IMG/VR virus record: IMGVR_UViG_3300017971_000190
Coordinates: 62,001 to 126,000 of that record
DNA: 64,000 nt
Direction: 5' to 3' (one strand)
In this document: in pieces, positions 2,127 through 52,321 of the stretch
How positions within the stretch are numbered: position 1 is the first letter of the stretch
Layout of the letters: every line of letters starts with the position of its first letter
The notes under the pieces: generated by a model
What the model was told of the DNA's origin: nothing
The model's input: only the letters and a program-made list of their open reading frames with translations
Database searches by the model: none
Translations under genes and position numbers: made by a program

Positions 2127-3102
2127 ATGACACCAGAAGAAAAAAATCGAATAGAAATAGGTTTGGATCTTGTTACTAAACGTTTAGCAGAGATTTTAGG
2201 ATTAGATGCTACTAATAAAGAAGTGTTAGAGGAACTATTTGTTAAAGTACAGTGTTATGGAGTAATGGATATAGCCGGTAAAGCAAAAATGGGTAGCACA
2301 CCTTCTGCAGAAGAATACTTAGAAAAATGTACCGAATCCATACTGAATATACAAAAGAATGTTGAAAAATAGTCAATAGAAATACAAATCACATACAATG
2401 GGATTCGTAACAAAATGATCTTGAACAAAACAAAATGACTCAATTTACAACAGTCTCCAAGTTATTCGTAGTCAAATGCAACAAGCACTTGACTCTGTTC
2501 CAGCTTCAGAGGCTAATAAGGATCACTTAAAAATACTAAAATCAACTATTGGCAGGTGGTCAAGTCTACTGGAAGGTGTTTGTCTAATGAGACAAAAAGA
2601 AATTAAGATAATTTCTCAATTGGATCCCAAAGTTGTTAGTCCGCCTTACAGTCCAGAAACTTTAGAACTGGCTAAGAAAGCTGCTGAACAAAAAGGTTGG
2701 TTAGAACGAGCTACCCCGGAAGAGAAGAAAGCTTGGGTAGAAAAACTGGCTAGAGATTTCGCTGCTGCTGGGGAAGCTGAATACAAAGTACTTAGAGAAG
2801 AAGGAATAACAAAAATGCCATCAGAAGAAAAAAGAAAAGAACAACTTCAAAAAGACATCGAGGATGGAAAAGTAGGTCATATGGAACATGACAGTGGTAA
2901 AAATTTACATTATTTAGCTGTTTGTACCTTCGTTTATATGTTGCTTGATAGTGATGCTAGAATGCAAGAAGTTTCCAGAGCTTTAGAATGTGCTCAAGGT
3001 GTAATTAAAGATAAAAATACAGAAATTACGACTGCCAATGTAGCTGCTGCAAAGCTGGCTAAAATATTAGTAGACGAGTTTCTTTGTGAGTCATTAGTTT
3101 GA
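2127..3102 (+). other. two hypothetical CDSs (2127..2372, 2476..3102)
   Basis: Co-directional ORFs in the packed gene chain; no recognisable motif. Confidence 0.6.
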
Positions 3103-3443
3103 TTTCTTCTACCACTACTAAAATTTGGCGACCGAAAACAGAAGGTGAAGTCTGTTGCTGTACCAATTTTCAATGGGGCAGTAATTGTCCCTCTTGTTTT
3201 GGTACTGGTTTTGCAGGTGGTTATGATTGTGTAGGAGTAGCAATACTTGAGGAAAGTTTCAGTTCTTATTACATTAGAGCGTTGTTCCAAATTAAAGTTG
3301 CAGATTTATTTGCTTACAATAATAGTGTTCATCAGGTGAGAACGGTACGACAGATGATGTTTTCAGACAGCTTTGAGATAAAGACAGAAAATCTTAATCT
3401 AATTTTCTACCAAATAGGCAAGTTAGTTGACTTGTTAAAATAA
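3099..3443 (+). CDS. Cys-rich neck/head-tail-connector-like paralog
   Basis: Motif WRPKTEGEVCCC...CPSCFGTGFAGGY, shared with 5207..5782 and the C-terminus of 18024..18923. Confidence 0.45.
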   Translation: MISSTTTKIWRPKTEGEVCCCTNFQWGSNCPSCFGTGFAGGYDCVGVAILEESFSSYYIRALFQIKVADLFAYNNSVHQVRTVRQMMFSDSFEIKTENLNLIFYQIGKLVDLLK

Positions 3444-3453
3444 GGAGACCACT

Positions 3454-3762
3454 GTGGACTCAATTAAAGACAAACCAAAACCAGGTCAAAAATGTAGGTA
3501 TTGTGCTGGAAAGGGAAAGTACAACAGTGAAGAGAAGTGCTACTGGTGTGAAGGTAGTGGTATAGAAAAAGTAATTTCAAATGATCTAAAACAGCACATT
3601 AAAAGGTTAAGAGTAGAGTACGATATTTTAACCACCTCAATTCATGAAATTTTTGACAAAAATGCAGAGGCTCTTAGTCTCACCCACCCTCGTTTGAGAG
3701 ACATGATCAAAGCTCGAAAACTGGTCCTGGAAACCATTATCCTTCTAAAGGAGAATCAGTAA
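3454..3762 (+). CDS. zinc-finger protein (CxxCxGxG repeats)
   Basis: CRYCAGKG and CYWCEGSG resemble DnaJ-type CxxCxGxG repeats; GGAG RBS before the GTG start. Confidence 0.6.
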   Translation: MDSIKDKPKPGQKCRYCAGKGKYNSEEKCYWCEGSGIEKVISNDLKQHIKRLRVEYDILTTSIHEIFDKNAEALSLTHPRLRDMIKARKLVLETIILLKENQ

Positions 3763-4479
3763 ATGCAAATAGAAACAGATTCCGAACTACTTAGAGCGGT
3801 AGTAGAAGGAAACAAAAGTGCTCAGCAACTCTTTGTTGAAGAGCTGTTTGCTGAAATAAAAAGCAACTTTGAAACCATGTTTTTGCCTTTTAAATGTATG
3901 AAGGCAGAAACTAAACCAACTCAAGATTGTCGATTGGCTGGTAAGGTTGATTTAATTGTAGATCCAATTACACAGTTTTCAGTGGTGGAAGATCTACCAA
4001 GTCAAGTAGAAATGCTTTTTAACGAACTGCTTGGTTCACTTCTGACTGCTTTTGAACCGGCAGTAAAGGGTTTGCTCACGGTTTGGAAAATTCCAGATAA
4101 TTTTATACTTACACCAGAAATACTCAAAAGCACTTTAAGTAATTATTCTTTTACACCTACGCATCTTTGGTGTGGATCTACTATGGTTAATTTTTTTATG
4201 TCTAGTAAGAGTTGGTATAAATTCTATGAGCCTACTACCACGTTAGAACAAGCTTCAGAGGGTCGCTTAGGTTTGCTTCGCGACATTGTAGAAAATCCTT
4301 TAGAACTATATACTGATTTGTTTCGTTATGATACATTAAGAACTTTAGATCCTGACGAGCTGGTAATTGTTTCTTCCTTCCAGCCTAAAAAAGTGTGGGT
4401 AGAGTGGAGTGACATAAAAAGACAAAAGGATGGCAGTTTTACAATTACCGCAACTCAATATGTAGGAGAGGTAGCTTAA
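3763..4479 (+). CDS. degenerate major-capsid-like protein (putative)
   Basis: C-terminal EPTTTLEQASEGRLGLLRDI...LYTDLFRYDTLRTLDPDELVIV resembles a large-phage capsid motif (DPVTQRELL..G..G.L.G..I.TD.FR....VL..GE..VV) recalled from memory. Confidence 0.45.
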   Translation: MQIETDSELLRAVVEGNKSAQQLFVEELFAEIKSNFETMFLPFKCMKAETKPTQDCRLAGKVDLIVDPITQFSVVEDLPSQVEMLFNELLGSLLTAFEPAVKGLLTVWKIPDNFILTPEILKSTLSNYSFTPTHLWCGSTMVNFFMSSKSWYKFYEPTTTLEQASEGRLGLLRDIVENPLELYTDLFRYDTLRTLDPDELVIVSSFQPKKVWVEWSDIKRQKDGSFTITATQYVGEVA

Positions 4480-4480
4480 A

Positions 4481-5244
4481 ATGGTTGAAGAAAAACAACA
4501 ACTAGTACCCATAAAATTGAAAGAAGAAAATTGCCCTCCGTTTTTGCTTGAGCTTTTAAAAATGGCTGAAGATAGTAGAGAAGAATATCCTGAAGAGGCA
4601 GGAAATGATCTCATTATTTTAGGAAGTGAAGCTATTGAAAAGCTTGGTAATTCCCTCTATGAAGTGGGTGTTGTTTTTCAGCTCAAGTTTAAAGGTAAAC
4701 CCTCGTTTAGAGTTGCTACCGTAGGCTAAAAATTTTTAGCTTGACACTACTAGCACCCTGTGATAAGGTGGGTTGTTACGCTAAGGATTAAGTGTGTGCC
4801 AGAAAATTTAAACTACAGTAAGTATGCTGGTTTTAAGATTCCTAATCACTGGCCACAGGTTTGTCCTTACTGTGGGTCTAAAAAATTGTGGCATGATTTT
4901 TCAATACCAGGTAGAGTTTTACAAAAGGCATTTTGCGTTGATTGTGAAAAAAGTTTTATTCCTCACCCCAGTATCAGATTTTGGAGACGATCATGAAAAA
5001 GCGACTACTTAAAAAGAGAAGGAAACGTGACCAAGCTCTCATGGCTGTTATCTTTGCTGATGCTGCAGCAGAATACATTCTCACTGGTTTTCCAAGTCAC
5101 CGTCCGAGCTACACCCCCCTCACACCAAAATCTACAAAAAGAGCTGTAAGAAAAACCATTAAAAAGATTAAGTTTCCAAAGAAGTACAAGTGGTTTGGTA
5201 CCATAAGTGGTCCCCTGGAAGAAAGAAGGTGCAACCGTGAGTAA
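4481..5244 (+). other. hypothetical CDSs 4481..4729, 4760..4996 (zinc ribbon, start uncertain) and 4981..5244
   Basis: Co-directional ORFs; CPYC...CVDC in 4760..4996. Confidence 0.55.
4741..4769 (+). promoter_or_regulatory. sigma70-type promoter
   Basis: TTGACA (4741-4746), 17-nt spacer, TAAGGT (4764-4769), in an intergenic gap. Confidence 0.7.
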
Positions 5245-5782
5245 GAAGAAAAATAATTTAATGGAACTCCCTAAGCAGGTACGCCAGAAGACAGTAGAGG
5301 AAGTTTTTATAGAAAAGGCCACAATCATTGTTTTTAAACCCCCTCTGACCGGTGCTGAGTGTGCTTGTCATGAAAAAATTATGGAACCAGCTGCCATTTG
5401 CCGAGAGTGTTACGGCACTGGTATTTTAGGAGGGTTTGATCTCCGAAAAGAAGTGATACCAATTGAAGAAGCTGCCTATGAAGAAATTGAGAAAGTAATT
5501 ACAGTTTTGGATACCACTAAAACAGACCACGCTTTTGCTTCTATGGATGATTGGGTTCTTCTCACTTTTGAGTGCCCTCTTCATTCGCATATTTATAGTG
5601 GATGTATTTTTGAGCTAAACAACAGATTTTGGAAAGTAACTAATGTAGAAGAAGAGTGTGAGGAAGACGCAGAAACAGGTGTTGGAAGACCTTATTGGGA
5701 AGTGCAGGCTCGCAAACTTCATGAATACGAACCAGCTTACATTTTTCTGGATGATAAACGTTGGAAAGGAGAAGAAAAGTGA
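5207..5782 (+). CDS. Cys-rich neck/head-closure-like paralog
   Basis: FKPPLTGAECAC...CRECYGTGILGGF followed by a beta-rich part (RFWKVTNV); likely start is GTG 5238. Confidence 0.5.
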   Translation: MVPWKKEGATVSKKKNNLMELPKQVRQKTVEEVFIEKATIIVFKPPLTGAECACHEKIMEPAAICRECYGTGILGGFDLRKEVIPIEEAAYEEIEKVITVLDTTKTDHAFASMDDWVLLTFECPLHSHIYSGCIFELNNRFWKVTNVEEECEEDAETGVGRPYWEVQARKLHEYEPAYIFLDDKRWKGEEK

Positions 5783-6804
5783 CAACCATTAAAGTAGGAA
5801 AATACAATGTAGATGTGGCCAACTTTAATTGTAATAGTGAGTTAGAGTGTTTTCAACTTGGTTTTGATAAAGGAACATTTGTACAAGGTCGTGGCTATGT
5901 AAAATACCACAAGAAAGAAAAACCGGTGTGCCAGACTCGGCACATTCACGGTTGCCCTCGTGTTGGTGTTTGTCTCGATTGCAGAAGTGTAATTAGTCCC
6001 AGTACAGCTTTAGCTGGAATTTGTTCTTGGTGTAGAGGTACAAATATTCAGTTAGACGAAAAGGATGCTACTAGTAATGATACCATTAAATGAATATGGT
6101 TATAAAAAAGGAATACTTTACGCTGACTGGGGCTGTCCTACTTGTCGTAAAGTTGTCTACCAAAATACTACTGAAGACGCTTTTAGTAAAGAGCGTATCT
6201 GTCACAGTTGTCAAAAAGCGAATAAAGAAGCCGAAAGACGATCTAAACATCTTTGGGAATTAGCCCAAACTGAACGTCCTCCCATTAGGTACAAAAACGG
6301 TATTTATGGAATTAGAGATGATCTATTTTCTTACTTGATTGGAATGTCTACTCCAGTTATAGATAGAAACTTACAAAGGCTTTACGCAAAGTCAGATCTT
6401 CAAATTCCTCAAAGGATTATCCCTACGCATCATAAAGAGTTTTAAAAATGAAACGGTTAACCAGAAAAATAGTTCATGAAGAATTGCTCCATTTTAACTT
6501 ATTTACTGTAACTCCGACTATTAGAGGATTTGATTTAGGCTATGGGCAAGACGGGTTTACAAGACTTCTAACAGGTGGTGGAATAGCTGGTAATGGTTAC
6601 AAGTGGTGGCTGTGCACTATTGGTGGAGTAACGCTTGCTGGCCCGCTTGTAACCAAAAAGCAGCTACAACGCTGTTTAAGGGAACACTTAGCTGGTTATT
6701 GTAATCGACCACAAGATCAATCTGGTTGGAGAACGTATGCCAGACTAAATAAAAATAAAAACGGAGAACATTACATTTGGGTGCAAAGCAGGATACCACA
6801 ATGA
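5761..6804 (+). other. hypothetical CDSs 5761..6093, 6065..6445 and 6448..6804
   Basis: Overlapping co-directional ORFs; the first two carry CxxC pairs. Confidence 0.6.
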
Positions 6805-7715
6805 CAACTAGCAGAGTTTTAAAATTAGCCAGACAAAAGTTAATCACTCCCCCACCATTCGTAGCCGGATCTATTCAGTACGAAGTAATTATGGGAAGTG
6901 AAGCATATGGAGTCTCTTCTGGAGATAGCGATAGAGACGTATACGGTTTTTGTGTCCCACCAAAGTCTATAGTATTTCCTCACACAGTTGGAGATATTCT
7001 AGGATTTGGACGACAGAAAAAACGATTTGAACAATATCAGCAACATCATGTTTATGACAAAGATGCTTTAGGTGGTAAAGGCGTTGAATATGATTTTTCT
7101 ATTTATAATATTGTAAAATATTTTAGTCTTTGTATGGAAAACAATCCGAATATGATCGACTCTCTTTTCGTTCCACAACGTTGTATTCTTTATATTACTA
7201 AAATTGGTCAAATGGTTAGAGAGAAAAGACAGTTGTTTCTTCATAAAGGTGCTTGGTTCAAATTTAAAGGTTATAGTTACAGCCAAATCAAAAAGATGAA
7301 AATTAAGAATCCGGAACCAGGAAGTAAAAGATATGAGAATATTAAAAAATTTGGTTTCGATGTAAAATTTGCTTATCATGTGGTACGTCTTCTTAATGAA
7401 GTTGAGGAGATTTTAGTAGAACAACATCTTACATTGGATAGAAATAGAGAACAATTAAAAGCAATTCGACGTGGAGAGTGGACTTTAGAACAAGTTGAAG
7501 ATTATTTCAATAAAAAAGAAGCAGAGCTTGAAACTGCTTATACTGAAAGTAAATTACAACACAGTCCAAATGAAGAAGTTATTAAAAATTTACTTCTCTC
7601 TTGTTTAGAAGAGTACTATGGTAATTTAGAAAACTGTGTTGAAATTCCCAATGCTGAGAAAGAGGCATTAAGAGAGATTGATAGAACTCTTGAAAAAGTA
7701 AGACACTGCTTATAG
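6801..7715 (+). CDS. DNA polymerase beta superfamily nucleotidyltransferase (RlaP/YcgL-like)
   Basis: GSEAYG...DSDRD signature (hG[GS]x9-13Dh[DE]), NNPN.ID.LF and helical C-terminus FDVKFAYHVVRLL; ATG 6801 overlaps the upstream stop. Confidence 0.85.
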   Translation: MTTSRVLKLARQKLITPPPFVAGSIQYEVIMGSEAYGVSSGDSDRDVYGFCVPPKSIVFPHTVGDILGFGRQKKRFEQYQQHHVYDKDALGGKGVEYDFSIYNIVKYFSLCMENNPNMIDSLFVPQRCILYITKIGQMVREKRQLFLHKGAWFKFKGYSYSQIKKMKIKNPEPGSKRYENIKKFGFDVKFAYHVVRLLNEVEEILVEQHLTLDRNREQLKAIRRGEWTLEQVEDYFNKKEAELETAYTESKLQHSPNEEVIKNLLLSCLEEYYGNLENCVEIPNAEKEALREIDRTLEKVRHCL

Positions 7716-7732
7716 AAAACAGGTGGAAGAAA

Positions 7733-7966
7733 ATGACTCCTAAAGACAACAATTTTAATGGTATTACTGTGGAAGTGGGTGGTAAAGTAATTGGAAAAAT
7801 AAAAGAGTGGAAGCCACAAAAAGAAATACCTGAAAAACTGACCATACCAGGTATTGATTTTCTACCCCCAATTAGCAAATTTGACGAGTTTGTAAAAACT
7901 ATTCATCTTCGTGTTTCTAGAACTTGGTGTGATGTATTGAGAGCTATAGGAAGAGAAGATGAATAA
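7733..7966 (+). CDS. mini-protein resembling the N-terminus of the tail tube protein
   Basis: GITVEVGGKVIGKIKEW aligns with GITIEANGAVLGRIQSW of 42992..43546. Confidence 0.6.
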   Translation: MTPKDNNFNGITVEVGGKVIGKIKEWKPQKEIPEKLTIPGIDFLPPISKFDEFVKTIHLRVSRTWCDVLRAIGREDE

Positions 7967-9522: not shown

Positions 9523-9523
9523 C

Positions 9524-11981: not shown

Positions 11982-12150
11982 TGTAATTTGGGTAGTAGTT
12001 TTAGTCCTTACTTTCTCCTTGTGGGCAGGAACTTTAATTTATGTGTGGACACTTCCGCCACACGGAAGAAAAGCATTTTGGTTAGGATTTTGGAACATGT
12101 TTGGTTTCAAAAGTTTTTTAGACGATAACAAAGATGACAAATTACACTAA
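11974..12150 (+). CDS. small membrane protein (58 aa)
   Basis: Read manually: MNDVIWVVVLVLTFSLWAGTLIYVW...; fills the gap and overlaps both neighbours. Confidence 0.55.
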   Translation: MNDVIWVVVLVLTFSLWAGTLIYVWTLPPHGRKAFWLGFWNMFGFKSFLDDNKDDKLH

Positions 12151-13866
12151 GCAACAAACTATTGAAGCTCTCCGCAATCCCCAGGTGGGCGATTATTTTT
12201 CAGAAATGATGAACTATCGTATGTGGGTGGTTAAAGTAACACCTAAAATAGTAGTTTATTTTGACGCCATTCCACCTTGTACCGTACCAGATGATTGTAC
12301 AATTATGGAAGTAGCTAGAGATTATTTTGTTGATCATTTCACAAAACCACATTGTTGGGTTCGTCTCATAAGTCATGATGAAAACGTAGCAGGTTGGTTA
12401 GAAAGGTAAACAAAATGGCAATTGAAGATTCAGCTGCTACTATGAGTAGATTAGCATTTTTTGCTGATGCCATCGCTGCTTGTCCGGAAGAAGCACAAGC
12501 TTTGAAAAATGTATTCTTGGAACCTACACCAAATGATGAAAATCCTCCTACATCAGAATTAAAATTAGCAATTACATTATTGGCTAATAAAATAACAAAA
12601 AATCTTTTAATAGAGAAGAATTCTCATCTTGCTATCGAAGCAACAATAGAAGAATTAGCTTTTGGTGATAGTGATGCTGGTAAAAGTGCAGCTAATGCTC
12701 TTAGATGGGCTTCTGGACATTATTATAAATGAAACAACTTCTTTGTAAAACTTGTGATAGTGGTCTCCTCCCTCATTGGGGTCCGTATGGAGACGAAAAA
12801 CTTTGGCAGTGTTTAAGCTGCGATAGTACCAAGGAAATTGAACCACAAGAAGAACAACTGTGGATAGAACTTTTTACTACAGGTTCTTTTTCTTGCCCTT
12901 TTTGTGGTGGAACTTTGGCGCAAAAACGAGTTCGATATCACCATGGTGTTTTAACTCTTCATTGCACCAGTAAAGGTTGCAAGTGGTGGACTTGGTTTTT
13001 CGGCAGTCAGTACAAAAAAGGAAAAACTCGTGACTCAATCCGTACTGGAAGCACTATTGAAGCAAAGTGATTATTATTGTCCTCATTGTTTAGAAACTGG
13101 GCATCTTACTAAGTTGCTTCTGGATTCAGAAGTCAATTTAGTTTGTGTAGCAGGTGAGCACGGTATTGTAGAAAGAGAACTGGCATTTACATGGGAAGAC
13201 GTACAAAATATTGTCACTGTTTTAACAATTAGTAAAGCTGATACTGAAGATCTCAAGAAAATGGTAACAATGACTCAAGAGGCGAGATCTTTAGCCAGAA
13301 AAGTAAGACAACAAAGTCCTCTCATGGAGAGTTAAACTATGAAAATTTACCTTATAGAAAATGGTTACTACAGTGATTACGGTATCGATGCTGTTTTTAC
13401 TTCTCTGGAAGCTGCTAAAAATTATTGTCAATATTATAACGATGATAAAGAAGATGGAATTGATTCTGACACTATTGAGTATCGGTTAGAGTACAGAATA
13501 AAAATAATGGAGACAGACTTAGAAACTCCTCAGGTTCCAAAAGACCTTAAAGGTTTTAGAGTTGTTATTAGTAAGGATGGAGAGACAGCTGTCACAGACA
13601 ATTGTTCCCTTGCAGAAGCGCAAAATAGAAAAAATAAACTAGAATTTTTTGACCCCCAAGAAACTACTAATTTTTGTGCACCTTTTTACCTTCACAGCCG
13701 AAGCCCTGAAGATCAACAACGGCTTACTCGTGTTCCTAGCATGAAATTGTGGGTGTTGGCCAGAGACGAAAAGCACGCAATTAAAATTGTAGCTGAAAAA
13801 CGAGCTGAGGTTTTAGCCTTGAACAAGTGGCCTACTAAGTTCGATCATTACGGTCGTGTTCTGTAA
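12134..13866 (+). other. hypothetical CDSs 12134..12409, 12394..12732, 12729..13070, 13030..13335 and 13339..13866
   Basis: Packed co-directional ORFs; 12729..13070 has two CxxC pairs. Confidence 0.6.
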
Positions 13867-13878
13867 AAAGGTAATAGA

Positions 13879-15602: not shown

Positions 15603-16251
15603 GGGAACAAGAGAGATGAAAATATCAGAACAGCAATTACTAATATTACTTGATATAACAAGACATGTTATTGATTGCAATGTTGTTAATCTAAATTTCG
15701 GATATTCAAAAGAGCACATCATAAAGTTCTATGAAAATATTATGAGTCAACAAAACGAAATAGTCGATACGCATCGTTTTCATTGTCGTAGTGAAGAATA
15801 CCTAAGACTCGCATTAGATTTGTACGAATCTTTAGAAGGCAGCGAGCCTAATTTTAAAGAAAGTGGTATTGGTAAACGTGCAACTGAGATATTGTATCCT
15901 AAACGAGAAGAAACAAAGGAGTCGTAAATGACACCGCAAGAAATGTTTGAGAAAGAACTGCTTAAACTTAAACCAAACATGAAAATGTGTTACGAATACT
16001 GCTCTTTTCTAGTTAAAGAAAAAAGCGATCTACATCTTGGCCCCTTTGCCAAAGCTCTAGCTTGGGCTCATATTGGTGTAGCTTTGGAAAATCCAGGTAA
16101 AGCCATTCCAATTTTTACCTCAACTGCAAAGTTAGAAGAAGTGAAGAAGGGGATTAAAAGAGCAATTGCTCAAGAGCTTCAAAATATAGAAGGGAGAGTT
16201 GACATTGGAGACACAACGATAACATTTTGGCCTCCTTATCAAGAAGAATAA
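15562..16251 (+). other. hypothetical CDSs 15562..15927 and 15928..16251
   Basis: Co-directional ORFs with no recognised motif. Confidence 0.55.
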
Positions 16252-16718
16252 AATTTATGTCAGTATTGAATACAACAGTAGAAACCACTTTTAATTTTAG
16301 CAGCCGGGAACATCCTGGCTGTCACATTTTCTGCTCCAAAGCTGATATTGATGATATTGATGTTTTTGTAGAAAAAGAAAAGATGAAGACAGTAGAGCAT
16401 GATCCTGTTGCTAAGTGGGAAGAAATTAGGTCTGTCCGAATTTTTGGTACCATTTTCAGTAAAGACCTTTTTAGGCAATTTAACTCCTTCACAGGAGAGA
16501 ATCAAACCCACCCAATCTCTATAGAAATATGGGCCTATAACGTTTTAGAAGATAAGGATTACATACTGAAAATAAATGATATTTGGATAATAAACACGGA
16601 AGATAACAAAAAGTTGGAGTTTTCAGCTGTTAATCTTATACCTTGGCGACCCAATATCAAAACCAATCCAACCTTAGTTGCTTTGGATAAAATCCATGCC
16701 ACCCCACTTGCAATTTAG
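16227..16718 (+). CDS. hypothetical protein, weakly tail-tube-like
   Basis: ENQTHPISIEIW...KINDIWI weakly parallels DQNFPFTCREFW...YRGCWF of the tube protein. Confidence 0.35.
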   Translation: MASLSRRIKFMSVLNTTVETTFNFSSREHPGCHIFCSKADIDDIDVFVEKEKMKTVEHDPVAKWEEIRSVRIFGTIFSKDLFRQFNSFTGENQTHPISIEIWAYNVLEDKDYILKINDIWIINTEDNKKLEFSAVNLIPWRPNIKTNPTLVALDKIHATPLAI

Positions 16719-16968
16719 CTACAAATCAATTTATCTTAATCGTGCCTATTACGGTAGGTACGTTTTATTGATTACTCCGCATAAAACTGTTAACCTCTCC
16801 CCTTACTATGCAATTCCACTTTCAGAAGATTCTACTATTAATTACATCGAAGCATACCGTACCTCTAGTCCTTTGCAAGCATCTAAAGTCTGTAAAGCTT
16901 CCTCCTTTGCCTCGTGGATCAGAAAACAAAAACGAAAAGAACAAAAGGCTTTAGGTAAAATACAATGA
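16678..16968 (+). CDS. hypothetical protein, paralog of the N-terminus of 18024..18923
   Basis: Shares CKASSFASW[IF]RK and an alignable upstream segment. Confidence 0.6.
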   Translation: MLWIKSMPPHLQFSYKSIYLNRAYYGRYVLLITPHKTVNLSPYYAIPLSEDSTINYIEAYRTSSPLQASKVCKASSFASWIRKQKRKEQKALGKIQ

Positions 16969-18018: not shown

Positions 18019-18023
18019 AAGGT

Positions 18024-18923
18024 GTGTTTATGAAATTCAGTTATAAAGATATTATAAGTGGTCGCATTTATGGGGGCCGTAAAGTAATTGATATATACCC
18101 TCGTAAAAGGTCTGATCGTTCTCCTTTTATCTATGTACCACTTAATTCAAAATCTATGATTTATTACAAACATGTAAACTCTGAAGAAGTTGCATCTGAA
18201 TTAGAAGTTGATTTTCTAGACGAAGAAGAAAAATGTTGTAAAGCTTCGTCATTTGCTTCATGGTTTAGGAAATCAAATAAGCTAAACCTTAAAGATGGTG
18301 AAGTTTATCTAATAGGTGATCCTCACCCTCTCTCACCTAAAAATTTATTAAATTCTTCTTCCACCCCTCCTAAAGGTAAAGGATGGTTAATTAAGAATTA
18401 CGAAAGTAAGACCATGCTAGACTCATCAGTAGGGGCTATTAGAATTCTGAAAAAAGCTGCGCAAGAAGGATTAGGAAAACTTGCCTTTCATTATCATCTT
18501 AAATGGCCATGGGGAGGAGAGCCTTGTAGACACAAGGATTCTTCAGACGGAACTAGAGATCGTTGTCTTTCTTGTTTAGGAAGTGATTACGAAGGAGGTT
18601 GGATTGTACAAGGACGAATTTCTATTCTTGTTTTAGAAATTCAAAAAGGAACTGTCCCTTATAATGGTCTGCGAGGTTGTATCCATTTTAATCGTCATGT
18701 TGCACCAAACGACGTTCTGTACGACCTTAAGAAAAACATAGCTTGGCGCCTTAGCCGTGTGGGTAGTAACGGAGATGCTTCACGCATACCATTTACTTGG
18801 GTAATTTATGCTAGAGAACTTCTACCTGGAGATCTGAAGGAAGATAATCAATTTAGTAAAAGAATAGAAAAATATGAAGAGAAAATCAAAATCAACCTAA
18901 AACAAACAGGAGAACAAAAATGA
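18024..18923 (+). CDS. composite protein: CKASSFASW domain plus neck-like Cys motif
   Basis: N-terminus similar to 16678..16968; C-terminal WPWGGEPC...CLSCLGSDYEGGW similar to the 3099 and 5207 motif. Confidence 0.55.
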   Translation: MFMKFSYKDIISGRIYGGRKVIDIYPRKRSDRSPFIYVPLNSKSMIYYKHVNSEEVASELEVDFLDEEEKCCKASSFASWFRKSNKLNLKDGEVYLIGDPHPLSPKNLLNSSSTPPKGKGWLIKNYESKTMLDSSVGAIRILKKAAQEGLGKLAFHYHLKWPWGGEPCRHKDSSDGTRDRCLSCLGSDYEGGWIVQGRISILVLEIQKGTVPYNGLRGCIHFNRHVAPNDVLYDLKKNIAWRLSRVGSNGDASRIPFTWVIYARELLPGDLKEDNQFSKRIEKYEEKIKINLKQTGEQK

Positions 18924-20754: not shown

Positions 20755-22064
20755 ACAATTTGACCCTAAAGGTGGGTACCGGTATCGTGAGGGACCAAAG
20801 AATCCTTCACCACCGTGGGATCGAGATGATGGACTTAAATTAACCTCTGAAGAGCAAAAAGAAGCTGAAAAATTATACAACCAAGTTTGTGAAGCCATTA
20901 AAGAAGGCTTCGTCCGTACTCCAGAAAAAGTAAAAGCAGCCCGAGAAGCCATGCTCTCTCACATGGACGAAGTAGAACAACACCGATTAGAAGCAGTTAA
21001 AGAAAGTGGGCACACGCTTGGTAAAACCAAATTGTTGGTAGAGTATAATTTTGATACAGAACTAGGTGTTTGGGAATTTAGAACTTTAAGACTACAAGAA
21101 GAATTGAAGTTCAACGATAAAGTAAAATTTGTGCAGCTGGAGGAAAAGTCCAAGCTGCCTGGTCCCCATCCACCCGATTGTGGGTGTTTTAATTGCGACC
21201 TAAAAAGAGCGAAAGACAAAAAGTAAATGCCTACGACTACAACAAAGCCTCGAAAAATTGCTTTACCTTCTTACTGCTGTCCTCACGGGTGTCAAACTAG
21301 TGGTGGCGACAAAGATTGTGATCACGACTATCCCCCAGAGTCAAAAGTAGAGCACACCACTTACGTAACCTGGCGTTGTAGCAAATGTGGAATGCGTGTG
21401 TCTTTTGAGGTATATCAATAAAGCAGTACTTTTATATGGAACGGTGTGAAGTAAAAAGCATTTATTGTGACGGTTGTGGTATGTTTGGAGATGGAGCTAG
21501 GGTGGGAGATTTATTTGTAGCACATCCAAGAACAATACTTGCTAAACGAGGATGGAAAACTGTTAATGAAAACGGGTTAATTAAAGATTATTGTTACGAA
21601 TGTTCTAAATCAAGAGGTTTGTTAAAACCTTCAGAGTATTTTTGGTGGGAAAAGAAGACAGTTTGAAACATTTTAGCTGGCTAAGTTTTAAAAGGTACTG
21701 GAAAAGTGGAATATGGGAACTTTTTCGTAATCCCACTAGTAAATTCCAATGGGAACGCTTTACTCAGTACACCATAGATATGGTTTTTCAAGGCTTCACT
21801 AGTGCTGATACATGGAGTGTAGATTGTTATATTGTTGAGTTTGCCATTCCTCGTTTGGAAATGTTTAGAGAGTATATGCCGTGTGGACATCCTGGAAATT
21901 TAAATAGTGACGAGTGGATAAAAATTGTAGACAAAATTATCAAAGGTTTGAAACTATACTACAAAGACCATTGCGACGGTAAAATACTAACGGAACAAGA
22001 AAAACAAGAGGTTGAAGAAGGTATGCAACTTTTCTTTAACTATTTTAGTAACCTGTGGAACTGA
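20747..22064 (+). other. hypothetical CDSs 20747..21226, 21227..21421, 21436..21666 and 21642..22064
   Basis: Packed ORFs; two are small CxxC proteins. Confidence 0.6.
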
Positions 22065-23255: not shown

Positions 23256-26200
23256 CTGGTCAAAAAAGACAAGGTTGGAATCTTTATGTAAGGGAATCTA
23301 TGGTGGTCATGGATCCGCTTCAACTAAGACCTGACACAGAAAATCCTGGTAAGGCAAAATTGTACCCACCTGGTACATACAAAATCCAACCTCGCCCCGT
23401 TCCACCGGAAAATTGGACTCCCCTTCCTGAAGGGTACGTTTATATTCCTGATCAATTGTTGTACTGTCCCAATTGCGGAGCTGATATCAAATTTTTAAAA
23501 ATGACAGAACCCTATGAGTCACCCCACCCATTTTATTACCCCACGCAACTAAAATTCGATTGTGGCCTTTGTGGTACCAAGAAAATGGCATATACTATTT
23601 TAGACTTTAACAGTGCAATTCCTGACAAAGTGAGGTGATAAATTGTCTAAGTACTATGTTGCTTTTAAATGTTGGAACTGTGGAATGGAACAACAAATTA
23701 GTTGGCCCGAAAGTTTCTTCTATGATGGAGCTAGTCAATCCTACGAATGCAACTGTTGTGATGCTGTGGCAAATTGCACCATAGTAATTCCAGAGCCTTG
23801 TCCTGATCTTCCGCAAGTGCGAGTAACTTTTACCACCCACGTTAAAACGATAAAGTCATGATTTGTGGTCGCTGTAAGACAATTCTTAGTGAAGAAGAAG
23901 AAAAAGAAAGTAATGAGCTTGATTGGGGAAAGGTTGCTTTTTGTCCGGTTTGTCGAGAAATCCTGGATAAAGAGAATAGAGAAGAAAGGCAACGTTTAAA
24001 TAGTTTAAAAGGTAGGCTCACTTGGAAGGATTACGGAGACGATGATGTTTAAAAGGCAATTGATTAACGTAACAGCAGCTGCTACCTTCGTGTTTTGCTC
24101 TTCTATGGAAGCGTTAACTACAGTTGGTATTTACAAGAAAAGACTGTGGCGTCTACAGAAACGCATAACTAAAATAGTAGAAAGGGATTAAGATGAAACC
24201 AGAAGAAATAGCTGAAAAACTCACTCAAATAGAAAACTGGGTACGTGATTCCAATATTGTAAATACAAATAATCTTTTAGAGGAAACACTTCACATAGCT
24301 CAGGATCTCCTTGTAGAAAATATGAGATTTAGAACAAATATAAAGATGGCTTTGGGTATACTTGAGAGGTGGGGTGGTTACCAAGACAGAATTATAAAAG
24401 CAACTGAAATTCTCAAAAATCTGGAAATCGAAAATAAAGGAAACGACCATGGATCAAAAAAATAACGAAGCTCTTTTCTCCATGATTACAGAAAGACCAG
24501 ATCCAAATCTTTCTTGGAAAGAAGCCGTCTGTCCTGCTTGCAGTAGTAAAGAGCTGACAAATCATTATGGAGAATCTACTTGTCTTGGGTGGTTTCCACG
24601 AGTACCTGAAGATGATACAGCTGATTGTTCAGGCAATCCAAATTTAACCAGTAATCACTACACTTGCAATGCTTGTGGGTTTGAATTTGTCTACCGTGTT
24701 AAACATGGAAATATTTGGGTTAAGGAATTAATTCATCAACTTGAGCCACAAAAAATACTGAAAGGTTTGCCCAACGTTCATAGTGGACAGTACAGTGTTT
24801 ACACTTGTGCTCACTGTGGAGAATTGGCAGTAAAAGTGGAAGATAACGAAAGGAAGTACAAACACATTGTAGCTCCTCCAAACCTGGAAAATCCACCATT
24901 TAAAATTGTGTGTACAATTTGTAAAAAGATTATAGAAAGCAAGTACGATTGTTACCAACATCTGTACAGTTACAAAAATGCTTTTCACGGTGTTAAGGGA
25001 CCAATCACATTGAGTGTTAAACCAGGTATAACTATTGCTAATAGTAGGGCCATTCAAAAAGGTTTACCAAAAGAGGGAGATACGTAGAATGCCATATGCA
25101 AGAGAAGTTTATGAAATAGTAGAAATTAGAAATGATAATGGTGATGATGATTTATTAGTTTGTATTGGGTATAATGTATCCAGTTGTCCCAGTTATGTAG
25201 AATACGACTCTAAAATTTATAAATGTCAAAAAGTTTGTCCTTACGGATCTACTGACCATCCTGGAGAGGAAAAATATGGAACTACTGATTATGCTATTTA
25301 TAGTATTTTCGATCTAAGAGGCGTTACAGGATAAAACCAAAAGGAGAGATTTAAAATGGACACAAAACAAACCACAATTCTTGAATCATTAGAAATATTA
25401 CTTAGTAAACAAGTGGAGTGGTACAAAGATACAACGTTACAATTAGTAGAATTAGAAAAAGGAATTGACTTTTATAGAGATACATTAAATTTAAAAGGAG
25501 AACGTGTGGGAGACGAAATAAATAAAGAAGTTTCGAAGTCCCCTCAAACAGTAGCAGATCATACAGAATTTCTTTTAGATAATTTCAGAATTATTAGTAC
25601 AGCTGTTTTTCAAAAATTAGTACTATTAAACGAAGATTTAAGTAGTGCTAACAAGAGACTTGTTGGAATACCCATAAAAGAGGAAACAGCACCATGAAAG
25701 AGATTACTTGTTGTAAGCTAGGAAAAGAAAATATTCATTTTAAAACCGCTAAAGAGGCAGATGCTGACGAAGACGGATTTTTCCTTTATTTAAAAAGTCA
25801 GTACCCAGATGGCTACTATGAACCTATTTTATTCTGTCCTTTTTGTGGACAGTGTGTTCCTCACGAAAGAATGCGCTGCAATACAGATCCTAAGCGCCGT
25901 GAGGTGGAAGTAGGAATTCATTTCGATTTTTCTAAAATGACTGAGACTCAGCAACAGCTAATTTGGAGTGCAACTACAGCTCTTAAATCTGCTGGAATTG
26001 GATTTGACACTGGTTGTGGGGGTGGTTTCGATTGGGAATGGGATTGGTCTTTAAGTGGGCCTGTGAAGGTATTGTTTAGAGAATTTGTTCAAAATAACCC
26101 AAAAAATCGTTATTATTGGGAAAAGAAAAAGCGAGAAGAAGGAAATGTTTCTGATCCAGTAGATAATGTAAATAGGTTTAAAAAAATGAAAAAATTAGCA

Positions 26201-27135
26201 GAAGACGTTTTAGAAGAGGATGAGGAGACAAATTGAAACGACGTATGTACATTAGTCAAGATAGTGGGGGAATTTACCTTTTCTCCAGCACCACCAAACC
26301 AACTAGACCAAGAACCAGAGCTTTGGATGGACGAACTAGAAGGTTTATTAACTATTGATGATGACGAATTGGTAAATTGTTATATAGAAAATATTAATGA
26401 AGAGAATATGCTTTTTAAACAAATTATTGATGAAGCAGAAAAGGAGTCAAAATGAGTTGGTATATTTACAACGCCATTGGAGCTAGAGTAGAAACAAATA
26501 AAATTAAAGAAGCATTAGCTAAAACTTACTCAACGTCTAGTCCAAAAGAAGCTTGCCGAACCAACAATTTGGTATTGGTTGACGCCAACACTGGTTACAG
26601 CTACGTTTGTTCCCATGTTCACAGTTTTGAAATTAATGGCGATAAACTTCTTAATTACGGTCCTCTTGTGCACTACCAAGATAAAAATTGGGACAAAGAT
26701 AAAGTGCGTCGATTTTTAGAACAGTTTCGTCTTTGGGAAGATGGATCATTTGGAATTTGGACCTTTGCTGTTAAGGAGTAGTATTACAGTATGAGAATAA
26801 GTACAGATATTGACATTCCAGATCCTCCTCAAAATTATTTTACACTCCCTATACCTTGTCCAGATTGTGGTTATCCGGTTTTAATTGGACAACTCATTCC
26901 AACAGGTTTACCTAATGAAAATGGTTTAGTAGATTACGAAAATAGCCGGTGTCACATTTTCTGTGGAAGACCAGATAATTTTTGTTTATCTTGGTCAGCT
27001 TCTTCAGATAATTATACGTGGAAATATGATAAAGATATAAGCGCAATTAGAAATGCAATAATGGGTCCTATAAAAGCTAAAAAAGCTAAAAGAAAACGAC
27101 GAGTAAAATCCCTTCTTAAAGGGAGGTTTAAATAG
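23252..27135 (+). other. cluster of small hypothetical CDSs (23252..23638, 23643..23861, 23858..24052, 24193..24465, 24449..25087, 25035..25334, 25356..25697, 25694..26236, 26264..26455, 26452..26781, 26791..27135)
   Basis: Co-directional and tightly packed; several are CxxC zinc ribbons. Confidence 0.6.
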
Positions 27136-27136
27136 C

Positions 27137-27612
27137 CACCAGACAGACAAGTAGGCAGACAAACAGACAGATAAGGAGACAAGCATCATGTTCGCAAAAT
27201 TTGTGAATTACACAGAGGGTAACGGAGTCCTAAGCCCTAAAGGATTCAGACCAACCGTTCCAAAAGTGAACAGCGTTTACGAAGCTTCGGAAGTAATTTA
27301 CGGTAAGAAGTGTTTTCGTAATTTTGAAGAATACATGAAGTGGATGGAAGATAGCGGAGATAGTCCAGCAGAAACAATTGGGTTTCCTTTGGTTAAAGAT
27401 GATCTTTTTGAAGTTGTAGCTACCCGTATTTACAATGAGAAAAATGGAGAAACAACAGTTCGAGTAGTGCACGCCATAGGCTGTGAATTTTACCTGCTTA
27501 ATGATGAAGGTAAAACTATAGATCGCGTGTGGTGTGCCAACGGTGAAGAACAGAAAAAGATGTTAAAAGAACATATTAACGAATAGTTAACTTAATTTTT
27601 GTCTGTCTGGTG
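27137..27612. repeat. 14-bp perfect inverted repeat pair flanking ORF 27188..27586
   Basis: CACCAGACAGACAA (27137-27150) is the exact reverse complement of TTGTCTGTCTGGTG (27599-27612). Confidence 0.85.
27188..27586 (+). CDS. hypothetical protein with a YLLNDEGKTID domain
   Basis: AAGGAG RBS; C-terminal motif shared with the N-terminal domain of 28431..30002. Confidence 0.75.
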   Translation: MFAKFVNYTEGNGVLSPKGFRPTVPKVNSVYEASEVIYGKKCFRNFEEYMKWMEDSGDSPAETIGFPLVKDDLFEVVATRIYNEKNGETTVRVVHAIGCEFYLLNDEGKTIDRVWCANGEEQKKMLKEHINE

Positions 27613-27628
27613 TTTCTGTAAATTCCCC

Positions 27629-27657
27629 TTGACAATTAGGTCGTATTCAGCTACAAA
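27629..27657 (+). promoter_or_regulatory. possible sigma70-type promoter for the RNA ligase
   Basis: TTGACA, 17 nt, TACAAA (weak -10). Confidence 0.5.
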
Positions 27658-27678
27658 ATACTAGTAGAGGTAAGAATC

Positions 27679-28326
27679 ATGTCACAAACCAAAACAAAAT
27701 ACCCCAGGACGTTACACCTTCCTTGGTCCCCGGGAAGAAGTAGGGATGATTTGGTTCTCACTTCCACCTCTCATTTTGAGGGGCAACAAGTTGTAATTAC
27801 TGAAAAAAGAGATGGTGAGAATACCACCATTTATCCTTTCACCGTACACGCTCGTTCTCTAGACTCCGCTTATCATCCTTCCCAAAGTTGGGTACGACAA
27901 CTTCAAGCTCAAATTGGTCACGAAATTCCAGCTGGCTGGAGAATCTGTGGGGAGAACCTTTATGCCGAGCACAGTATTCCCTACCACGTCACCAATTATT
28001 TTGAAGTGTTCTCTATTTGGGATGAAACTAACACGGCTCTAAGCTGGAATGCTACTCAGGAATGGGCAGATCTCTTAAATCTTCTGACAGTTCCTGTTTT
28101 GTTCCAAGGGGAATGGCCCGGAAAAGAGTTTCTAGATGAGCTGTGGCAACATTATTGTCAGAAAATGGATCCTGCCTTGGTTGAAGGATACGTTGTACGG
28201 TTAGCAGGACGTTTTTCTTACGATTCTTTCTCGGCTTCGGTGGCCAAATTTGTTCGTCCCGATCACGTACAAACTGACGAGCACTGGAAAAAGAATTGGA
28301 AGCCTAACCAACTCGTCCAGTCTTGA
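27679..28326 (+). CDS. ATP-dependent RNA ligase family protein
   Basis: KYPRTLHLPWSPG, TEKRDGEN (motif I KxDG), ICGENLYA.HSI, EGYVVR and KFVR..HV motifs. Confidence 0.85.
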   Translation: MSQTKTKYPRTLHLPWSPGRSRDDLVLTSTSHFEGQQVVITEKRDGENTTIYPFTVHARSLDSAYHPSQSWVRQLQAQIGHEIPAGWRICGENLYAEHSIPYHVTNYFEVFSIWDETNTALSWNATQEWADLLNLLTVPVLFQGEWPGKEFLDELWQHYCQKMDPALVEGYVVRLAGRFSYDSFSASVAKFVRPDHVQTDEHWKKNWKPNQLVQS

Positions 28327-28430
28327 CCCCTCCTTTGTAAAACCTTCCTAGACCGCGAGTTGATTTAACTCGCCCAGACCGAAGTTCGTAGAGCGATCGA
28401 AAGACCGAAAAACAAAAGGAGAAGTGTCTC

Positions 28431-30002
28431 ATGATTTTGAAAATCATCCCCATCCGTCCCGCTGGAAGACCACATCTGAAAAATATTAATCGTTACGTAG
28501 AAGGTTCTGAATTTTCAATAGAGCTTCATACGTTTAATGACGAAAAGACGTATGAGGCTTGGCTTGTAGAAAGAACCTCCATAGAAAGTATTGAGCACAG
28601 TACACTAAATATTCACGATTATAAAGGATTGGACAGCTGGCAAGTATTTGTCGTAGATGTTGAGAATTTCTTAGATGGAGACTTTGTTGTTTCTACTCAA
28701 ACCATTCTTTGCAATCGTATATTTCTGCTTAACGACAAGGGAAAGACAGTAGACACATTTAACACAACAAATCCATTAGTATTTCCTAGAAAGCGAGAAA
28801 ATGAAACTAAATTCATAGATGGACATGGAGGTACTGTTGAAATAGAAGATGGAAAAATTAAACATACTACACCATTAAAAAATGTTTTTGAATTAAAAAA
28901 TGTTTTTGATGGACTGAAAGAAAGTGTGGGGCAAGAATTTAGAAAAAGGCAAGAATTCGTAGCAAATTTAACTGAAGAACAAGAAAAAGAACTTGGAGCG
29001 CATTTTTATGGTGGTAACATTGGAGGGAAGGTAGAGGTTATAGAAGGGGTAACAGTCAAACCTTTAACTGTCGATAAACCAACTCCTTGTCCCTCCATTC
29101 TTCATTGGTGTACAGAACTGAAATATCTGGGCGGTAAAAATGTTTGGCCAGAGAATTTAAAAACTTTACTAGCTGCTTTTCAGGAACAGTGCCCCTCTTG
29201 TGGAGCTGCCCTTCGTTACGGTCGTTGTGTTCTTTGTGATAAATCCAAACAAGAATTATTTTCTCACCCGATCAATGAGGTAGTAGGAATTAGAGGGCAA
29301 CGCACTGGTAGCAGCTTTCTATCGGCCATAGCTGCTACCTACCAGTTACAAAAAATACTCTCTTTAGATATGAGTTTAAGTACCTACTATGATATGCCTC
29401 CTACGGAATTTGAAATGGTACTAGTAGATCCAGGAAAACATATTTGGAATCACTTTTGGGAATTAATACACAATTCACCTTGGTTTGAGCAATACTGGAG
29501 TTTCTTAAAAAATGCAGTTAATTGGGGTTTCAGTAGACCTAGCAATGATAAAGCTATTTTTACTGCCAACGAAAAGACGAATTTAATTGTACGAAGAGGA
29601 GGAGTGGAAGAGAACTACAAAGGAAAAACCAGAATTTTTGCTGCCATAGATGATCCAGATTGGGTAGATTGTTATGGTAATAAAGATAAACGGGTTCCTA
29701 TAGTAGATATTTATACAAGCCTTAAGAGTAGCCTTTCAACGGTGAAAAAGAAAGCTAACGATCAAAATTATAAATTGCAACCCTTGTTGTGGTTAATGGG
29801 TCCTCCTAACGGAGAAGGTGTAACTAAAAGTCTTCTTAGAAAAATAAAACAAGCTAAAAAGAAAAAAGTCAACCAACTAATTCTACATCAACCAACTTGG
29901 GAAATTAATCCAGAAACCAGCGAGGAAGAACTACGGAAAGAAGCCAGAAATGATGCAGAATTTCGTCGTGACTTTGGTGCTGAATTTGTAAAAGTGAAAT
30001 AA
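28431..30002 (+). CDS. fusion of an N-terminal LLNDKGKT domain and a degenerate terminase-large-subunit ATPase domain
   Basis: NEVVGIRGQRTGSS (Walker A-like, lacking Lys), SPWF, KGKTRIFAAIDD (Walker B DE to DD), HQPTWEINP and RRDFGAEF follow large-phage TerL order; ends before any nuclease domain. Confidence 0.7.
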   Translation: MILKIIPIRPAGRPHLKNINRYVEGSEFSIELHTFNDEKTYEAWLVERTSIESIEHSTLNIHDYKGLDSWQVFVVDVENFLDGDFVVSTQTILCNRIFLLNDKGKTVDTFNTTNPLVFPRKRENETKFIDGHGGTVEIEDGKIKHTTPLKNVFELKNVFDGLKESVGQEFRKRQEFVANLTEEQEKELGAHFYGGNIGGKVEVIEGVTVKPLTVDKPTPCPSILHWCTELKYLGGKNVWPENLKTLLAAFQEQCPSCGAALRYGRCVLCDKSKQELFSHPINEVVGIRGQRTGSSFLSAIAATYQLQKILSLDMSLSTYYDMPPTEFEMVLVDPGKHIWNHFWELIHNSPWFEQYWSFLKNAVNWGFSRPSNDKAIFTANEKTNLIVRRGGVEENYKGKTRIFAAIDDPDWVDCYGNKDKRVPIVDIYTSLKSSLSTVKKKANDQNYKLQPLLWLMGPPNGEGVTKSLLRKIKQAKKKKVNQLILHQPTWEINPETSEEELRKEARNDAEFRRDFGAEFVKVK

Positions 30003-52276: not shown

Positions 52277-52321
52277 AATCGAGTTCCTTCCAAAATACAG
52301 GTTCTAGCACCTAGTAATACG

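What the first reader, a model, noticed from the sequence alone, without database searches (positions are those of the whole stretch)
3099..30002. A shadow set of truncated or dead virion-assembly proteins scattered through the accessory region: candidate decoys against pattern-recognition immunity
Seen in sequence: outside the tail operon lie a terminase-ATPase-like ORF with broken Walker motifs and no nuclease domain (28431), a 77-aa copy of the tube N-terminus (7733), a weaker tube-like ORF (16227), a capsid-like ORF (3763) and three neck-like Cys-motif ORFs (3099, 5207, 18024). All are intact reading frames with normal gene packing, so they do not look like decaying DNA. Established: several bacterial defences sense exactly these proteins (Avs/STAND NTPases bind terminase and portal, DSR2 binds tail tube, CapRel binds capsid). 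Inference: the phage may express non-assembling mimics that occupy sensors without triggering them, or that exclude superinfecting relatives. Neutral duplication remnants are the alternative.
Basis: partly seen in the sequence, partly recalled or inferred. Interest (0 to 1): 0.85.

Follow-up and report, generated by a model that had tools for sequence, protein, structure and literature searches.

The report
Fragment copies of virion genes
An uncultured giant phage carries, away from its real head and tail genes, at least four conserved extra genes built from pieces of its own DNA-packaging enzyme, capsid protein and tail-tube protein; what they do is unknown, and a role as decoys against bacterial immune sensors is possible but untested.

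Summary
The window is bases 62,001-126,000 of a 221.7-kb metagenomic jumbo-phage contig. Four of the seven ORFs really resemble the phage's own assembly proteins.

- ORF 28431 is a large-terminase (TerL) ATPase domain without a nuclease domain. Its Walker A Lys and catalytic Glu are replaced. A canonical full-length TerL lies about 90 kb away on the same contig.
- ORF 3763 carries about 70-85 residues of the capsid protein's conserved C-terminal core.
- ORF 7733 carries the first β-hairpin of the tail tube (ORF 42992; tube fold confirmed by AlphaFold and Foldseek).

ORFs 16227, 3099 and 5207 show no link to any virion protein. The last two share only a CxxCxGTG zinc knuckle.

These are not decaying DNA. 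The lysine-less TerL clade recurs in phages of 38% and 54% GC. Orthologues of 3763 and 7733 in a relative have pN well below pS.

The decoy idea is compatible with these results but untested. The closest precedent, T4 vs.8, is a TerL-ATPase-like accessory protein that activates Avs2 rather than blocking it.

Verdict: observation partly confirmed, interpretation open, moderately high interest.

The parts
28431..30002 (+). Second, degenerate TerL paralogue (523 aa). It has a conserved N-domain (aa 1-120, 28431-28790), a zinc ribbon (aa 254-269, 29190-29237) and a TerL ATPase-like domain (aa 283-518, 29277-29984). The Walker A site at 29295-29315 reads GQRTGSS. The Walker B site at 29640-29660 reads AAIDDPD. 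There is no nuclease domain.
27188..27586 (+). 132-aa paralogue of the N-terminal domain of the TerL-like protein
   Evidence: blastp 24.5% over 102 aa; phmmer E 2e-4 to 9e-4
3763..4479 (+). 238-aa protein whose aa 121-207 (4123-4383) derive from the conserved C-terminal core of the phage's HK97-fold capsid protein. The N-terminal 120 aa are unrelated to it.
   Evidence: An orthologue in a relative (L100, 46% identity) also hits the capsid protein.
18024..18923 (+). 299-aa mosaic. Its N-part (aa 3-87) is paralogous to ORF 16678. Its aa 81-134 (18264-18425) resemble capsid protein aa 308-369. Its Cys motif lies at aa 168-196 (18525-18611).
16678..16968 (+). 96-aa paralogue of the N-part of 18024. 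It has no capsid-like segment.
   Evidence: 40% identity over 84 aa; z = 0.6 against the capsid protein
7733..7966 (+). 77-aa protein whose aa 3-29 (7739-7819) copy the first β-hairpin of the tail tube. The orthologue in a relative is 156 aa.
42992..43546 (+). Genuine tail tube protein (184 aa), the parent of the 7733 motif
   Evidence: 92 homologues. AlphaFold2 pLDDT 71. Foldseek matches tube proteins of contractile injection systems, phage 812 and lambda gpV, with E down to 5e-7.
38260..41742 (+). Probable tail sheath (1,160 aa). Its N- and C-termini are conserved with Rctr197k_065, which lies upstream of that phage's tube paralogues.
   Evidence: inference from the conservation pattern and gene order
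3099..3443 (+). 114-aa Cys-knuckle protein (CxxCxGTGxxGGYD). It is not linked to any virion protein and is absent from the relative L099/L100.
5207..5782 (+). Cys-knuckle protein, called as 173 aa from 5261. It is conserved in relatives (65% and 38% identity) and is not linked to any virion protein.
16227..16718 (+). 163-aa ORF of unknown function.

Best explanation
What it is (shown). The accessory block of this jumbo phage holds at least four conserved genes, each assembled from a fragment of one of the phage's own morphogenesis proteins joined to unrelated sequence:
- a TerL ATPase domain that has lost the Walker A Lys, the catalytic Glu and the whole nuclease domain;
- two proteins carrying adjacent pieces of the capsid protein's conserved C-terminal core;
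- a small protein carrying the first β-hairpin of the tail tube.
The functional parents are encoded elsewhere in the genome.

How it most likely works (inferred). These proteins cannot polymerise or catalyse. They probably act purely by binding, presenting a surface of the parent protein. I rate the single most likely use as conflict with host sensors that recognise these same folds. They could act as competitive decoys or sponges for Avs-type, CapRel-type or DSR2-type receptors, occupying the sensor without supplying the features needed for activation, such as ATP and active-site residues in the TerL case.
For: Parents and copies coexist:
- The canonical TerL (Walker A WGQRSGKS, Walker B IIDELGW, nuclease domain present) matches the family HMM at E 4.6e-112.
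- The capsid protein matches NF042927 at E 2e-48 and phrog_2522 at E 5e-47.
- The tube fold is confirmed.

Catalytic loss is clade-wide and specific:
- Of 151 aligned family members, 137 keep the Lys and 137 keep the Glu.
- The four full-length sequences of the window's clade have S, S, N, N at the Lys position. Those four plus the fragment P0100 have D, D, N, S, S at the Glu position. The flanking motif residues stay conserved.
- The clade is monophyletic (support 0.94) and sits on a long branch.
- Only 1 of 117 IMG/VR family hits lacks the Lys.

The genes are maintained:
- Clade members occur in a 38%-GC phage and in a 54%-GC, 350-kb phage.
- pN/pS is about 0.3-0.44 for 3763, 5207 and 7733 against orthologues in a relative.
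- The N-domain of 28431 is 75% identical to that of P0002, against 52% for the ATPase part.

Location: the genes sit among DNA-metabolism and small accessory genes, on the opposite strand from and 55-90 kb away from the head module.

Literature:
- Avs families sense most core virion proteins, as monomers (PMC13581612).
- EcAvs2 is triggered by the TerL ATPase domain alone, and SeAvs3 reads active-site residues plus bound ATP (PMC13601566).
Against: - No binding or expression data exist, and the host is unknown.
- A copy that has lost the features sensors read may simply not be bound at all. That would make it stealthy rather than a decoy.
- The only studied analogue, T4 vs.8, activates EcAvs2.
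- The copies are only 25-41% identical to the parents over short stretches, so mimicry of a whole recognition surface is doubtful for 7733 (27 aa) and 18024 (about 55 aa).
- The lysine-less clade uniquely gained an Arg at P-loop position 1 and keeps an Asp three residues after the Walker B Asp. The ATPase may therefore be deviant rather than dead.
- There are no PADLOC, Pfam or NCBIfam hits that point to a function.
Confidence: 0.35

Rival explanations
1. Assembly regulators or minor virion parts. The fragments keep one interface of the parent. They bind the phage's own capsid, tube or portal proteins to time, cap or nucleate assembly, or they are minor structural proteins, much as T4 gp24 is a capsid-protein paralogue.
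For: - The retained capsid segment is the most conserved core motif of the family. It also aligns to PDB 6wkk Gp27.
- The copies are under purifying selection.
- Jumbo phages commonly carry structural paralogues (general knowledge).
Against: - The genes lie in a DNA-metabolism and accessory block far from the head and tail modules.
- The fragments are too short to fold as the parent.
- The TerL-like clade is not sister to the resident TerL and shares only 25% identity with it, so co-assembly with it is unlikely.
Confidence: 0.25
2. Exapted domains with unrelated jobs. The TerL ATPase fold and zinc ribbon are reused as a DNA-binding or regulatory protein, and the capsid and tube pieces are reused as generic β-structure in new proteins. 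The resemblance to virion proteins is historical only.
For: - The most conserved part of 28431 is its novel N-domain, which has its own stand-alone paralogue 27188.
- The copies are mosaics with unrelated N- or C-terminal parts.
- The sister sequence P0101 is ATPase-only with intact motifs.
Against: Three different morphogenesis proteins are represented in one 27-kb block of accessory genes, which seems more than a coincidence. I did not test this against a null model.
Confidence: 0.2
3. Superinfection exclusion. The fragments act as dominant-negative subunits that poison capsid, tail or motor assembly of co-infecting related phages, while the resident parents have diverged enough to escape.
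For: - A catalytically dead ATPase subunit would poison a ring motor (general knowledge of ring ATPases).
- The TerL copy is phylogenetically foreign to the resident TerL.
Against: There is no evidence of a target. The capsid fragments resemble the resident capsid protein itself (33-41% identity), so self-poisoning would be a risk.
Confidence: 0.12
4. Neutral duplication or recombination remnants that happen to stay open.
For: - Protein divergence is 3-6 times faster than in neighbouring enzymes (dN 0.28-0.48 against 0.08-0.13).
- ORF 3099 is absent from the relative.
Against: - pN is well below pS for all tested pairs.
- Orthologues are intact at 46-66% identity.
- The lysine-less TerL clade is kept in phages with very different GC content.
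- The motif flanks are conserved.
Confidence: 0.05

Closest known systems
T4 vs.8 (TerL-ATPase-like accessory protein; Evans et al. 2026, PMC13601566)
   Same: It is a stand-alone protein homologous to the terminase ATPase domain only. It is encoded outside the packaging genes in a phage that also has a normal TerL.
   Different: vs.8 keeps its Walker A and B motifs and activates EcAvs2 on co-expression. The window protein lacks the Lys and the Glu, carries an extra N-domain and a zinc ribbon, and belongs to the PaBG/NCTB-type jumbo-phage TerL family. Direct homology to vs.8 was not tested.
Canonical large terminase of PaBG/NCTB/Yoloswag-type jumbo phages (phrog_17415)
   Same: The zinc ribbon and the ATPase-domain sequence are homologous, with 23-27% identity.
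   Different: The window protein has no nuclease domain. Walker A Lys is replaced by Ser and the catalytic Glu by Asp. It is not the genome's only copy.
Structural paralogues such as T4 gp24 (vertex protein, a paralogue of capsid protein gp23)
   Same: A second gene derived from the capsid protein sits in the same genome.
   Different: gp24 is full-length, folds like gp23 and is built into the capsid. ORFs 3763 and 18024 keep only about 55-87 residues of the parent within otherwise unrelated proteins, and they lie in the accessory block.
Protein decoys and sponges among phage anti-defence proteins (Ocr DNA mimic, Tad/Acb sponges, DSAD1 against DSR2)
   Same: The proposed mode of action is the same: binding without catalysis to blunt a host sensor.
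   Different: None of these is derived from the very virion protein that the sensor detects. No binding has been shown here.

Membership tests
Large terminase subunit (TerL) | Sequence homology of the N-terminal ASCE ATPase domain | tested here: met
   phrog_17415 E 6.5e-16. 387 family hits. Family HMM alignment.
Large terminase subunit (TerL) | Walker A GxxxxGK[ST] with the catalytic Lys | tested here: not met
   The window reads GQRTGSS. The Lys is present in 137 of 151 relatives and absent from the four full-length members of this clade.
Large terminase subunit (TerL) | Walker B hhhhDE with the catalytic Glu | tested here: not met
   The window reads AAIDD. Clade members have D, D, N, S, S at this position.
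Large terminase subunit (TerL) | C-terminal RNase H-like nuclease domain | tested here: not met
   The ORF ends at the ATPase boundary. No nuclease match exists anywhere in the window. The family HMM match stops at about position 446.
Large terminase subunit (TerL) | It is the genome's packaging enzyme (single copy) | tested here: not met
   A canonical TerL lies at contig about 181-183 kb (HMM E 4.6e-112, motifs intact).
HK97-fold major capsid protein | Full-length match to a capsid family model | tested here: not met
   ORFs 3763 and 18024 have no PHROG, Pfam or NCBIfam hit. Only 68-87 and 62 aligned residues match. The real capsid protein meets NF042927 at 164.7 bits against a cut-off of 80.
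Tail tube protein (Hcp/gpV-like β-sandwich) | Complete tube fold of about 140 residues or more | tested here: not met
   ORF 7733 is 77 aa and the profile match covers 27 residues. ORF 42992 meets this feature.
Tail tube protein (ORF 16227) | Any significant similarity to the tube family | tested here: not met
   No HMM hit. z = -0.7.
Neck / head-tail connector proteins (ORFs 3099, 5207, 18024) | Similarity to a neck or adaptor protein of this or any phage | tested here: inconclusive
   No PHROG, Pfam, PDB or phage tblastn hit. No paralogue exists in 178 kb of the contig. The phage's own neck genes were not identified, and the AlphaFold2 model of 5261-5782 was too poor to use (pLDDT 47.5).
Anti-defence decoy | Binds a host sensor of the parent protein without activating it | not testable with these tools
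   This needs co-expression or binding assays, or at least co-folding. There are no PADLOC hits.

The most novel reading that the evidence does not exclude
A jumbo-phage lineage maintains a dedicated set of 'ghost' morphogenesis proteins: a dead TerL ATPase, capsid-core fragments and a tube hairpin. They would be expressed from its accessory block as decoys that soak up bacterial pattern-recognition receptors (Avs, CapRel, DSR2-like) aimed at those folds. This would be a counter-defence strategy based on self-mimicry of conserved virion proteins.
Probability: 0.2. Interest if true: 0.9.

Novelty: new variant of a known kind. Interest (0 to 1): 0.62.

Why it matters
Recent work shows that bacterial STAND/Avs receptors watch nearly every conserved virion protein. 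It remains open how phages escape sensors that read features they cannot change. This locus offers concrete, clonable candidates for that question:
- a conserved clade of terminase-ATPase copies that have lost exactly the ATP-site residues some sensors read;
- capsid and tube fragments kept under selection.

Even if they prove not to be decoys, a catalytically degenerate TerL paralogue conserved across very different giant phages is a new pseudoenzyme family. It shows that 'a terminase hit' in metagenomic phage annotation need not be the packaging enzyme.

Tried and rejected
- Megablast of 12 kb against GenBank phages found no match.
- PHROGs, Pfam, NCBIfam, PADLOC, PDB sequence search and phage tblastn on the six small ORFs found nothing.
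- I considered that 28431 is the phage's only TerL, split from its nuclease. No nuclease domain lies nearby. The idea was rejected once the canonical TerL was found.
- I considered that contig 3300017971_000328, which carries a canonical TerL, is part of the same genome. This was rejected because its GC is 52% against 38%.
- I looked for a repeated promoter-like motif that would fetch many contig pieces in one scan. None exists.
It was still useful as a census.
- An alignment of 34 canonical TerLs was too diverse for the locus finder.
- Picking the resident TerL among library representatives by amino-acid composition left 84 candidates, so I abandoned it.
- AlphaFold2 of 5261-5782 on a 3-sequence alignment gave pLDDT 47.5, so no fold search was run on it.
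- All assemblies that carry the window are 100% identical, so they gave no divergence for dN/dS. I used the relative L100 instead, where dS is saturated.
- One look-up failed because the gene start was called differently.
Full report
SOURCE AND SETTING

The TerL-like protein is encoded on JGI contig 3300017971 Ga0180438_10000059 (221,679 bp). The window is bases 62,001-126,000 of that contig. Identical sequence occurs in ENA and Logan assemblies of up to 298 kb.

The window has 38% GC, and its apparent genes (long, tightly packed ORFs) all read on the + strand. It has no tRNA or Rfam hit and no near relative among GenBank phages. The finding's region (3-30 kb) is a block of small ORFs mixed with nucleotide-metabolism genes: dCTP deaminase, RlaP, R2K, nucleoside deoxyribosyltransferase and RNA ligase. 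Gyrase/topoisomerase and PolA lie upstream.

THE TAIL MODULE IS REAL

ORF 42992-43546 has 92 well-conserved homologues. An AlphaFold2 model built on 35 of them has pLDDT 71. The model matches tail-tube proteins of contractile injection systems, phage 812 and lambda gpV, and also Hcp, with Foldseek E down to 5e-7.

The 1,160-aa ORF at 38260 shares its N- and C-termini with a protein that lies upstream of the tube paralogues in Virus Rctr197k. That pattern is typical of a sheath. This assignment is an inference.

THE TerL-LIKE ORF (28431)

Residues 283-518 match the ATPase part of jumbo-phage terminases. A zinc ribbon upstream is shared with them. The ORF stops at the ATPase boundary, and no nuclease domain is detectable in the window.

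I aligned 151 family members from an exhaustive library search.
- The Walker A Lys and the catalytic Glu are each present in 137 members.
- The four full-length members of the window's clade have S, S, N, N at the Lys position.
- Those four plus a fragment of the same clade (P0100) have D, D, N, S, S at the Glu position.
- The neighbouring motif residues are conserved in this clade.
- The clade also has a unique Arg before the P-loop and a conserved Asp three residues after the Walker B Asp. These could be compensatory, so 'dead' is likely but not proven.

The clade is monophyletic (support 0.94) and long-branched. Its sister, P0101, is an ATPase-only protein with intact motifs. One clade member sits on a 350-kb contig of 54% GC. 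Among 117 family hits in IMG/VR, only that one lacks the Lys.

IS IT THE ONLY TERMINASE?

I walked the contig from 5.4 to 183.1 kb. A head module lies on the minus strand.
- A 379-aa HK97-fold capsid protein lies at about 146-147 kb (phrog_2522 E 5e-47, NF042927 E 2e-48, PDB 6wkk Gp27).
- A canonical terminase lies at about 181-183 kb. It matches the family HMM at E 4.6e-112, has Walker A WGQRSGKS and Walker B IIDELGW, and has a nuclease domain. Its N-terminus runs off the fetched piece.

The window ORF is therefore a second copy. It is 25% identical to the resident enzyme and is not its sister in the tree. This points to an old duplication or to horizontal acquisition.

CAPSID-LIKE AND TUBE-LIKE ORFs

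With the real capsid protein in hand, ORF 3763 aligns to its residues 251-332. The match has 33% identity, phmmer E 3e-8 against all 1,059 contig ORFs, z = 16.3, and hhalign probability 96.7% over 68 columns. Its orthologue in a related phage (L100) matches the capsid protein as well.

ORF 18024 aligns to the next capsid segment, residues 308-369. This match is shorter and weaker but significant (pairwise E 8e-6, z = 9.3). Its N-part is paralogous to ORF 16678.

ORF 7733 matches the tube profile over 27 residues (E 4e-6, z = 9.6). Its orthologue in L100 is 156 aa and matches the tube over about 100 aligned columns. That orthologue's C-terminal half has no counterpart in the window.

WHAT FAILED

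ORF 16227 has no similarity to the tube or the capsid protein.

ORFs 3099 and 5207 share only a CxxCxGTGxxGG[YF]D knuckle. CxxCxG and CxxC motifs are frequent in this block. Neither ORF resembles any other ORF in 178 kb of the contig. The structure model of 5207 was unusable. 'Neck-like' therefore has no support. The phage's own neck genes were not identified, so this point is not formally closed.

SELECTION

All assemblies that carry the window are identical. A related phage (L099/L100, 40% GC) keeps orthologues of 3763 (46% identity), 5207 (66%) and 7733 (58%) in the same gene order. It lacks 3099.

Nei-Gojobori counts for these orthologue pairs:

| ORF | pN | pS |
|---|---|---|
| 3763 | 0.36 | 0.81 |
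| 5207 | 0.23 | 0.75 |
| 7733 | 0.24 | 0.58 |

Synonymous sites are saturated, so the ratios are rough, but they are clearly below 1. Protein divergence is 3-6 times that of the neighbouring enzymes.

MECHANISM

Shown:
- The four genes are fragment-derived copies of virion-assembly proteins.
- They coexist with intact parents.
- They cannot do the parents' jobs.
- They are kept by selection.

Inferred: they act by binding.

The decoy reading fits two published findings. Avs families sense most core virion proteins, as monomers (PMC13581612). [quoted passage not shown]

The same paper shows that T4 vs.8, an accessory TerL-ATPase-like protein with intact motifs, activates EcAvs2. Loss of the ATP site could therefore mean escape from sensing rather than decoying. 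Assembly regulation, exaptation and exclusion of rival phages remain open. No defence-family or other family hit helps decide among them.

NOVELTY

I found no description of lysine-less, nuclease-less TerL paralogues or of capsid-core fragment proteins in the papers searched. The nearest precedent is vs.8. I class the finding as a new variant of a known kind (virion-protein paralogues and pseudoenzymes), with an attractive but unproven conflict reading.

LIMITS

- 20% of the contig was not read, nor was the extra sequence of the 298-kb assembly.
- The host is unknown.
- Expression timing is unknown.
- The 18024 and 7733 similarities are short.

Noticed in passing
window 32857-36042: A 1,061-aa SNF2-type helicase has a faint LAGLIDADG hit and a D5-like stretch, which suggests an intein or homing-endonuclease insertion.
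   Followed up: no
L005:2470-5283 (Erwinia phage Yoloswag TerL): The alignment shows an insertion of about 260 residues exactly inside the Walker A motif (GQR|C...HN|SGKS). This looks like an intein in the terminase P-loop.
   Followed up: no
L182 and L217 (IMG/VR loci): Canonical TerLs of this family are split into two ORFs about 1 kb apart within the ATPase domain. This is probably an intron or homing-endonuclease insertion.
   Followed up: no
window 52000-56000: An island of higher GC (0.44-0.47 against 0.38) contains a ParB-like gene (52554-53591) and an unassigned 372-aa ORF (54518-55636).
   Followed up: partly
window 3454-3762 and many others: The accessory block is unusually rich in small CxxC and CxxCxG zinc-knuckle ORFs. 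ORF 3454 has two DnaJ-type CxxCxGxG repeats. Enrichment was not tested against a null model.
   Followed up: partly
window 21642-22064 and 12955-13332: These ORFs have paralogues elsewhere on the contig, at about 8.9-9.4 kb (E 1e-8) and about 56.0-56.3 kb (E 2.5e-6). Gene duplication in this genome is therefore not limited to virion genes.
   Followed up: no
window 30016-30471: A 151-aa zinc-ribbon ORF just after the TerL-like gene matches phrog_14808. It also resembles Rctr197k_066, which lies between the sheath and tube genes of that phage, and it gives a weak Lar-like Pfam hit.
   Followed up: no
L095 (Virus Rctr197k, 110.8-112.3 kb and 119.3-119.5 kb): The closest GenBank relative of the tail module carries two annotated CRISPR arrays next to transposase-like genes.
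   Followed up: no
window 62246-62824: An HslV/proteasome-β-like peptidase is encoded beside a thymidylate synthase and HNH endonucleases.
   Followed up: no
contig about 24.7-45 kb (L220, L221): A run of large ORFs (527, 837, 1,538, 704 and 756 aa) has no family hit at all. They are probably further virion or baseplate proteins upstream of PolA.
   Followed up: partly
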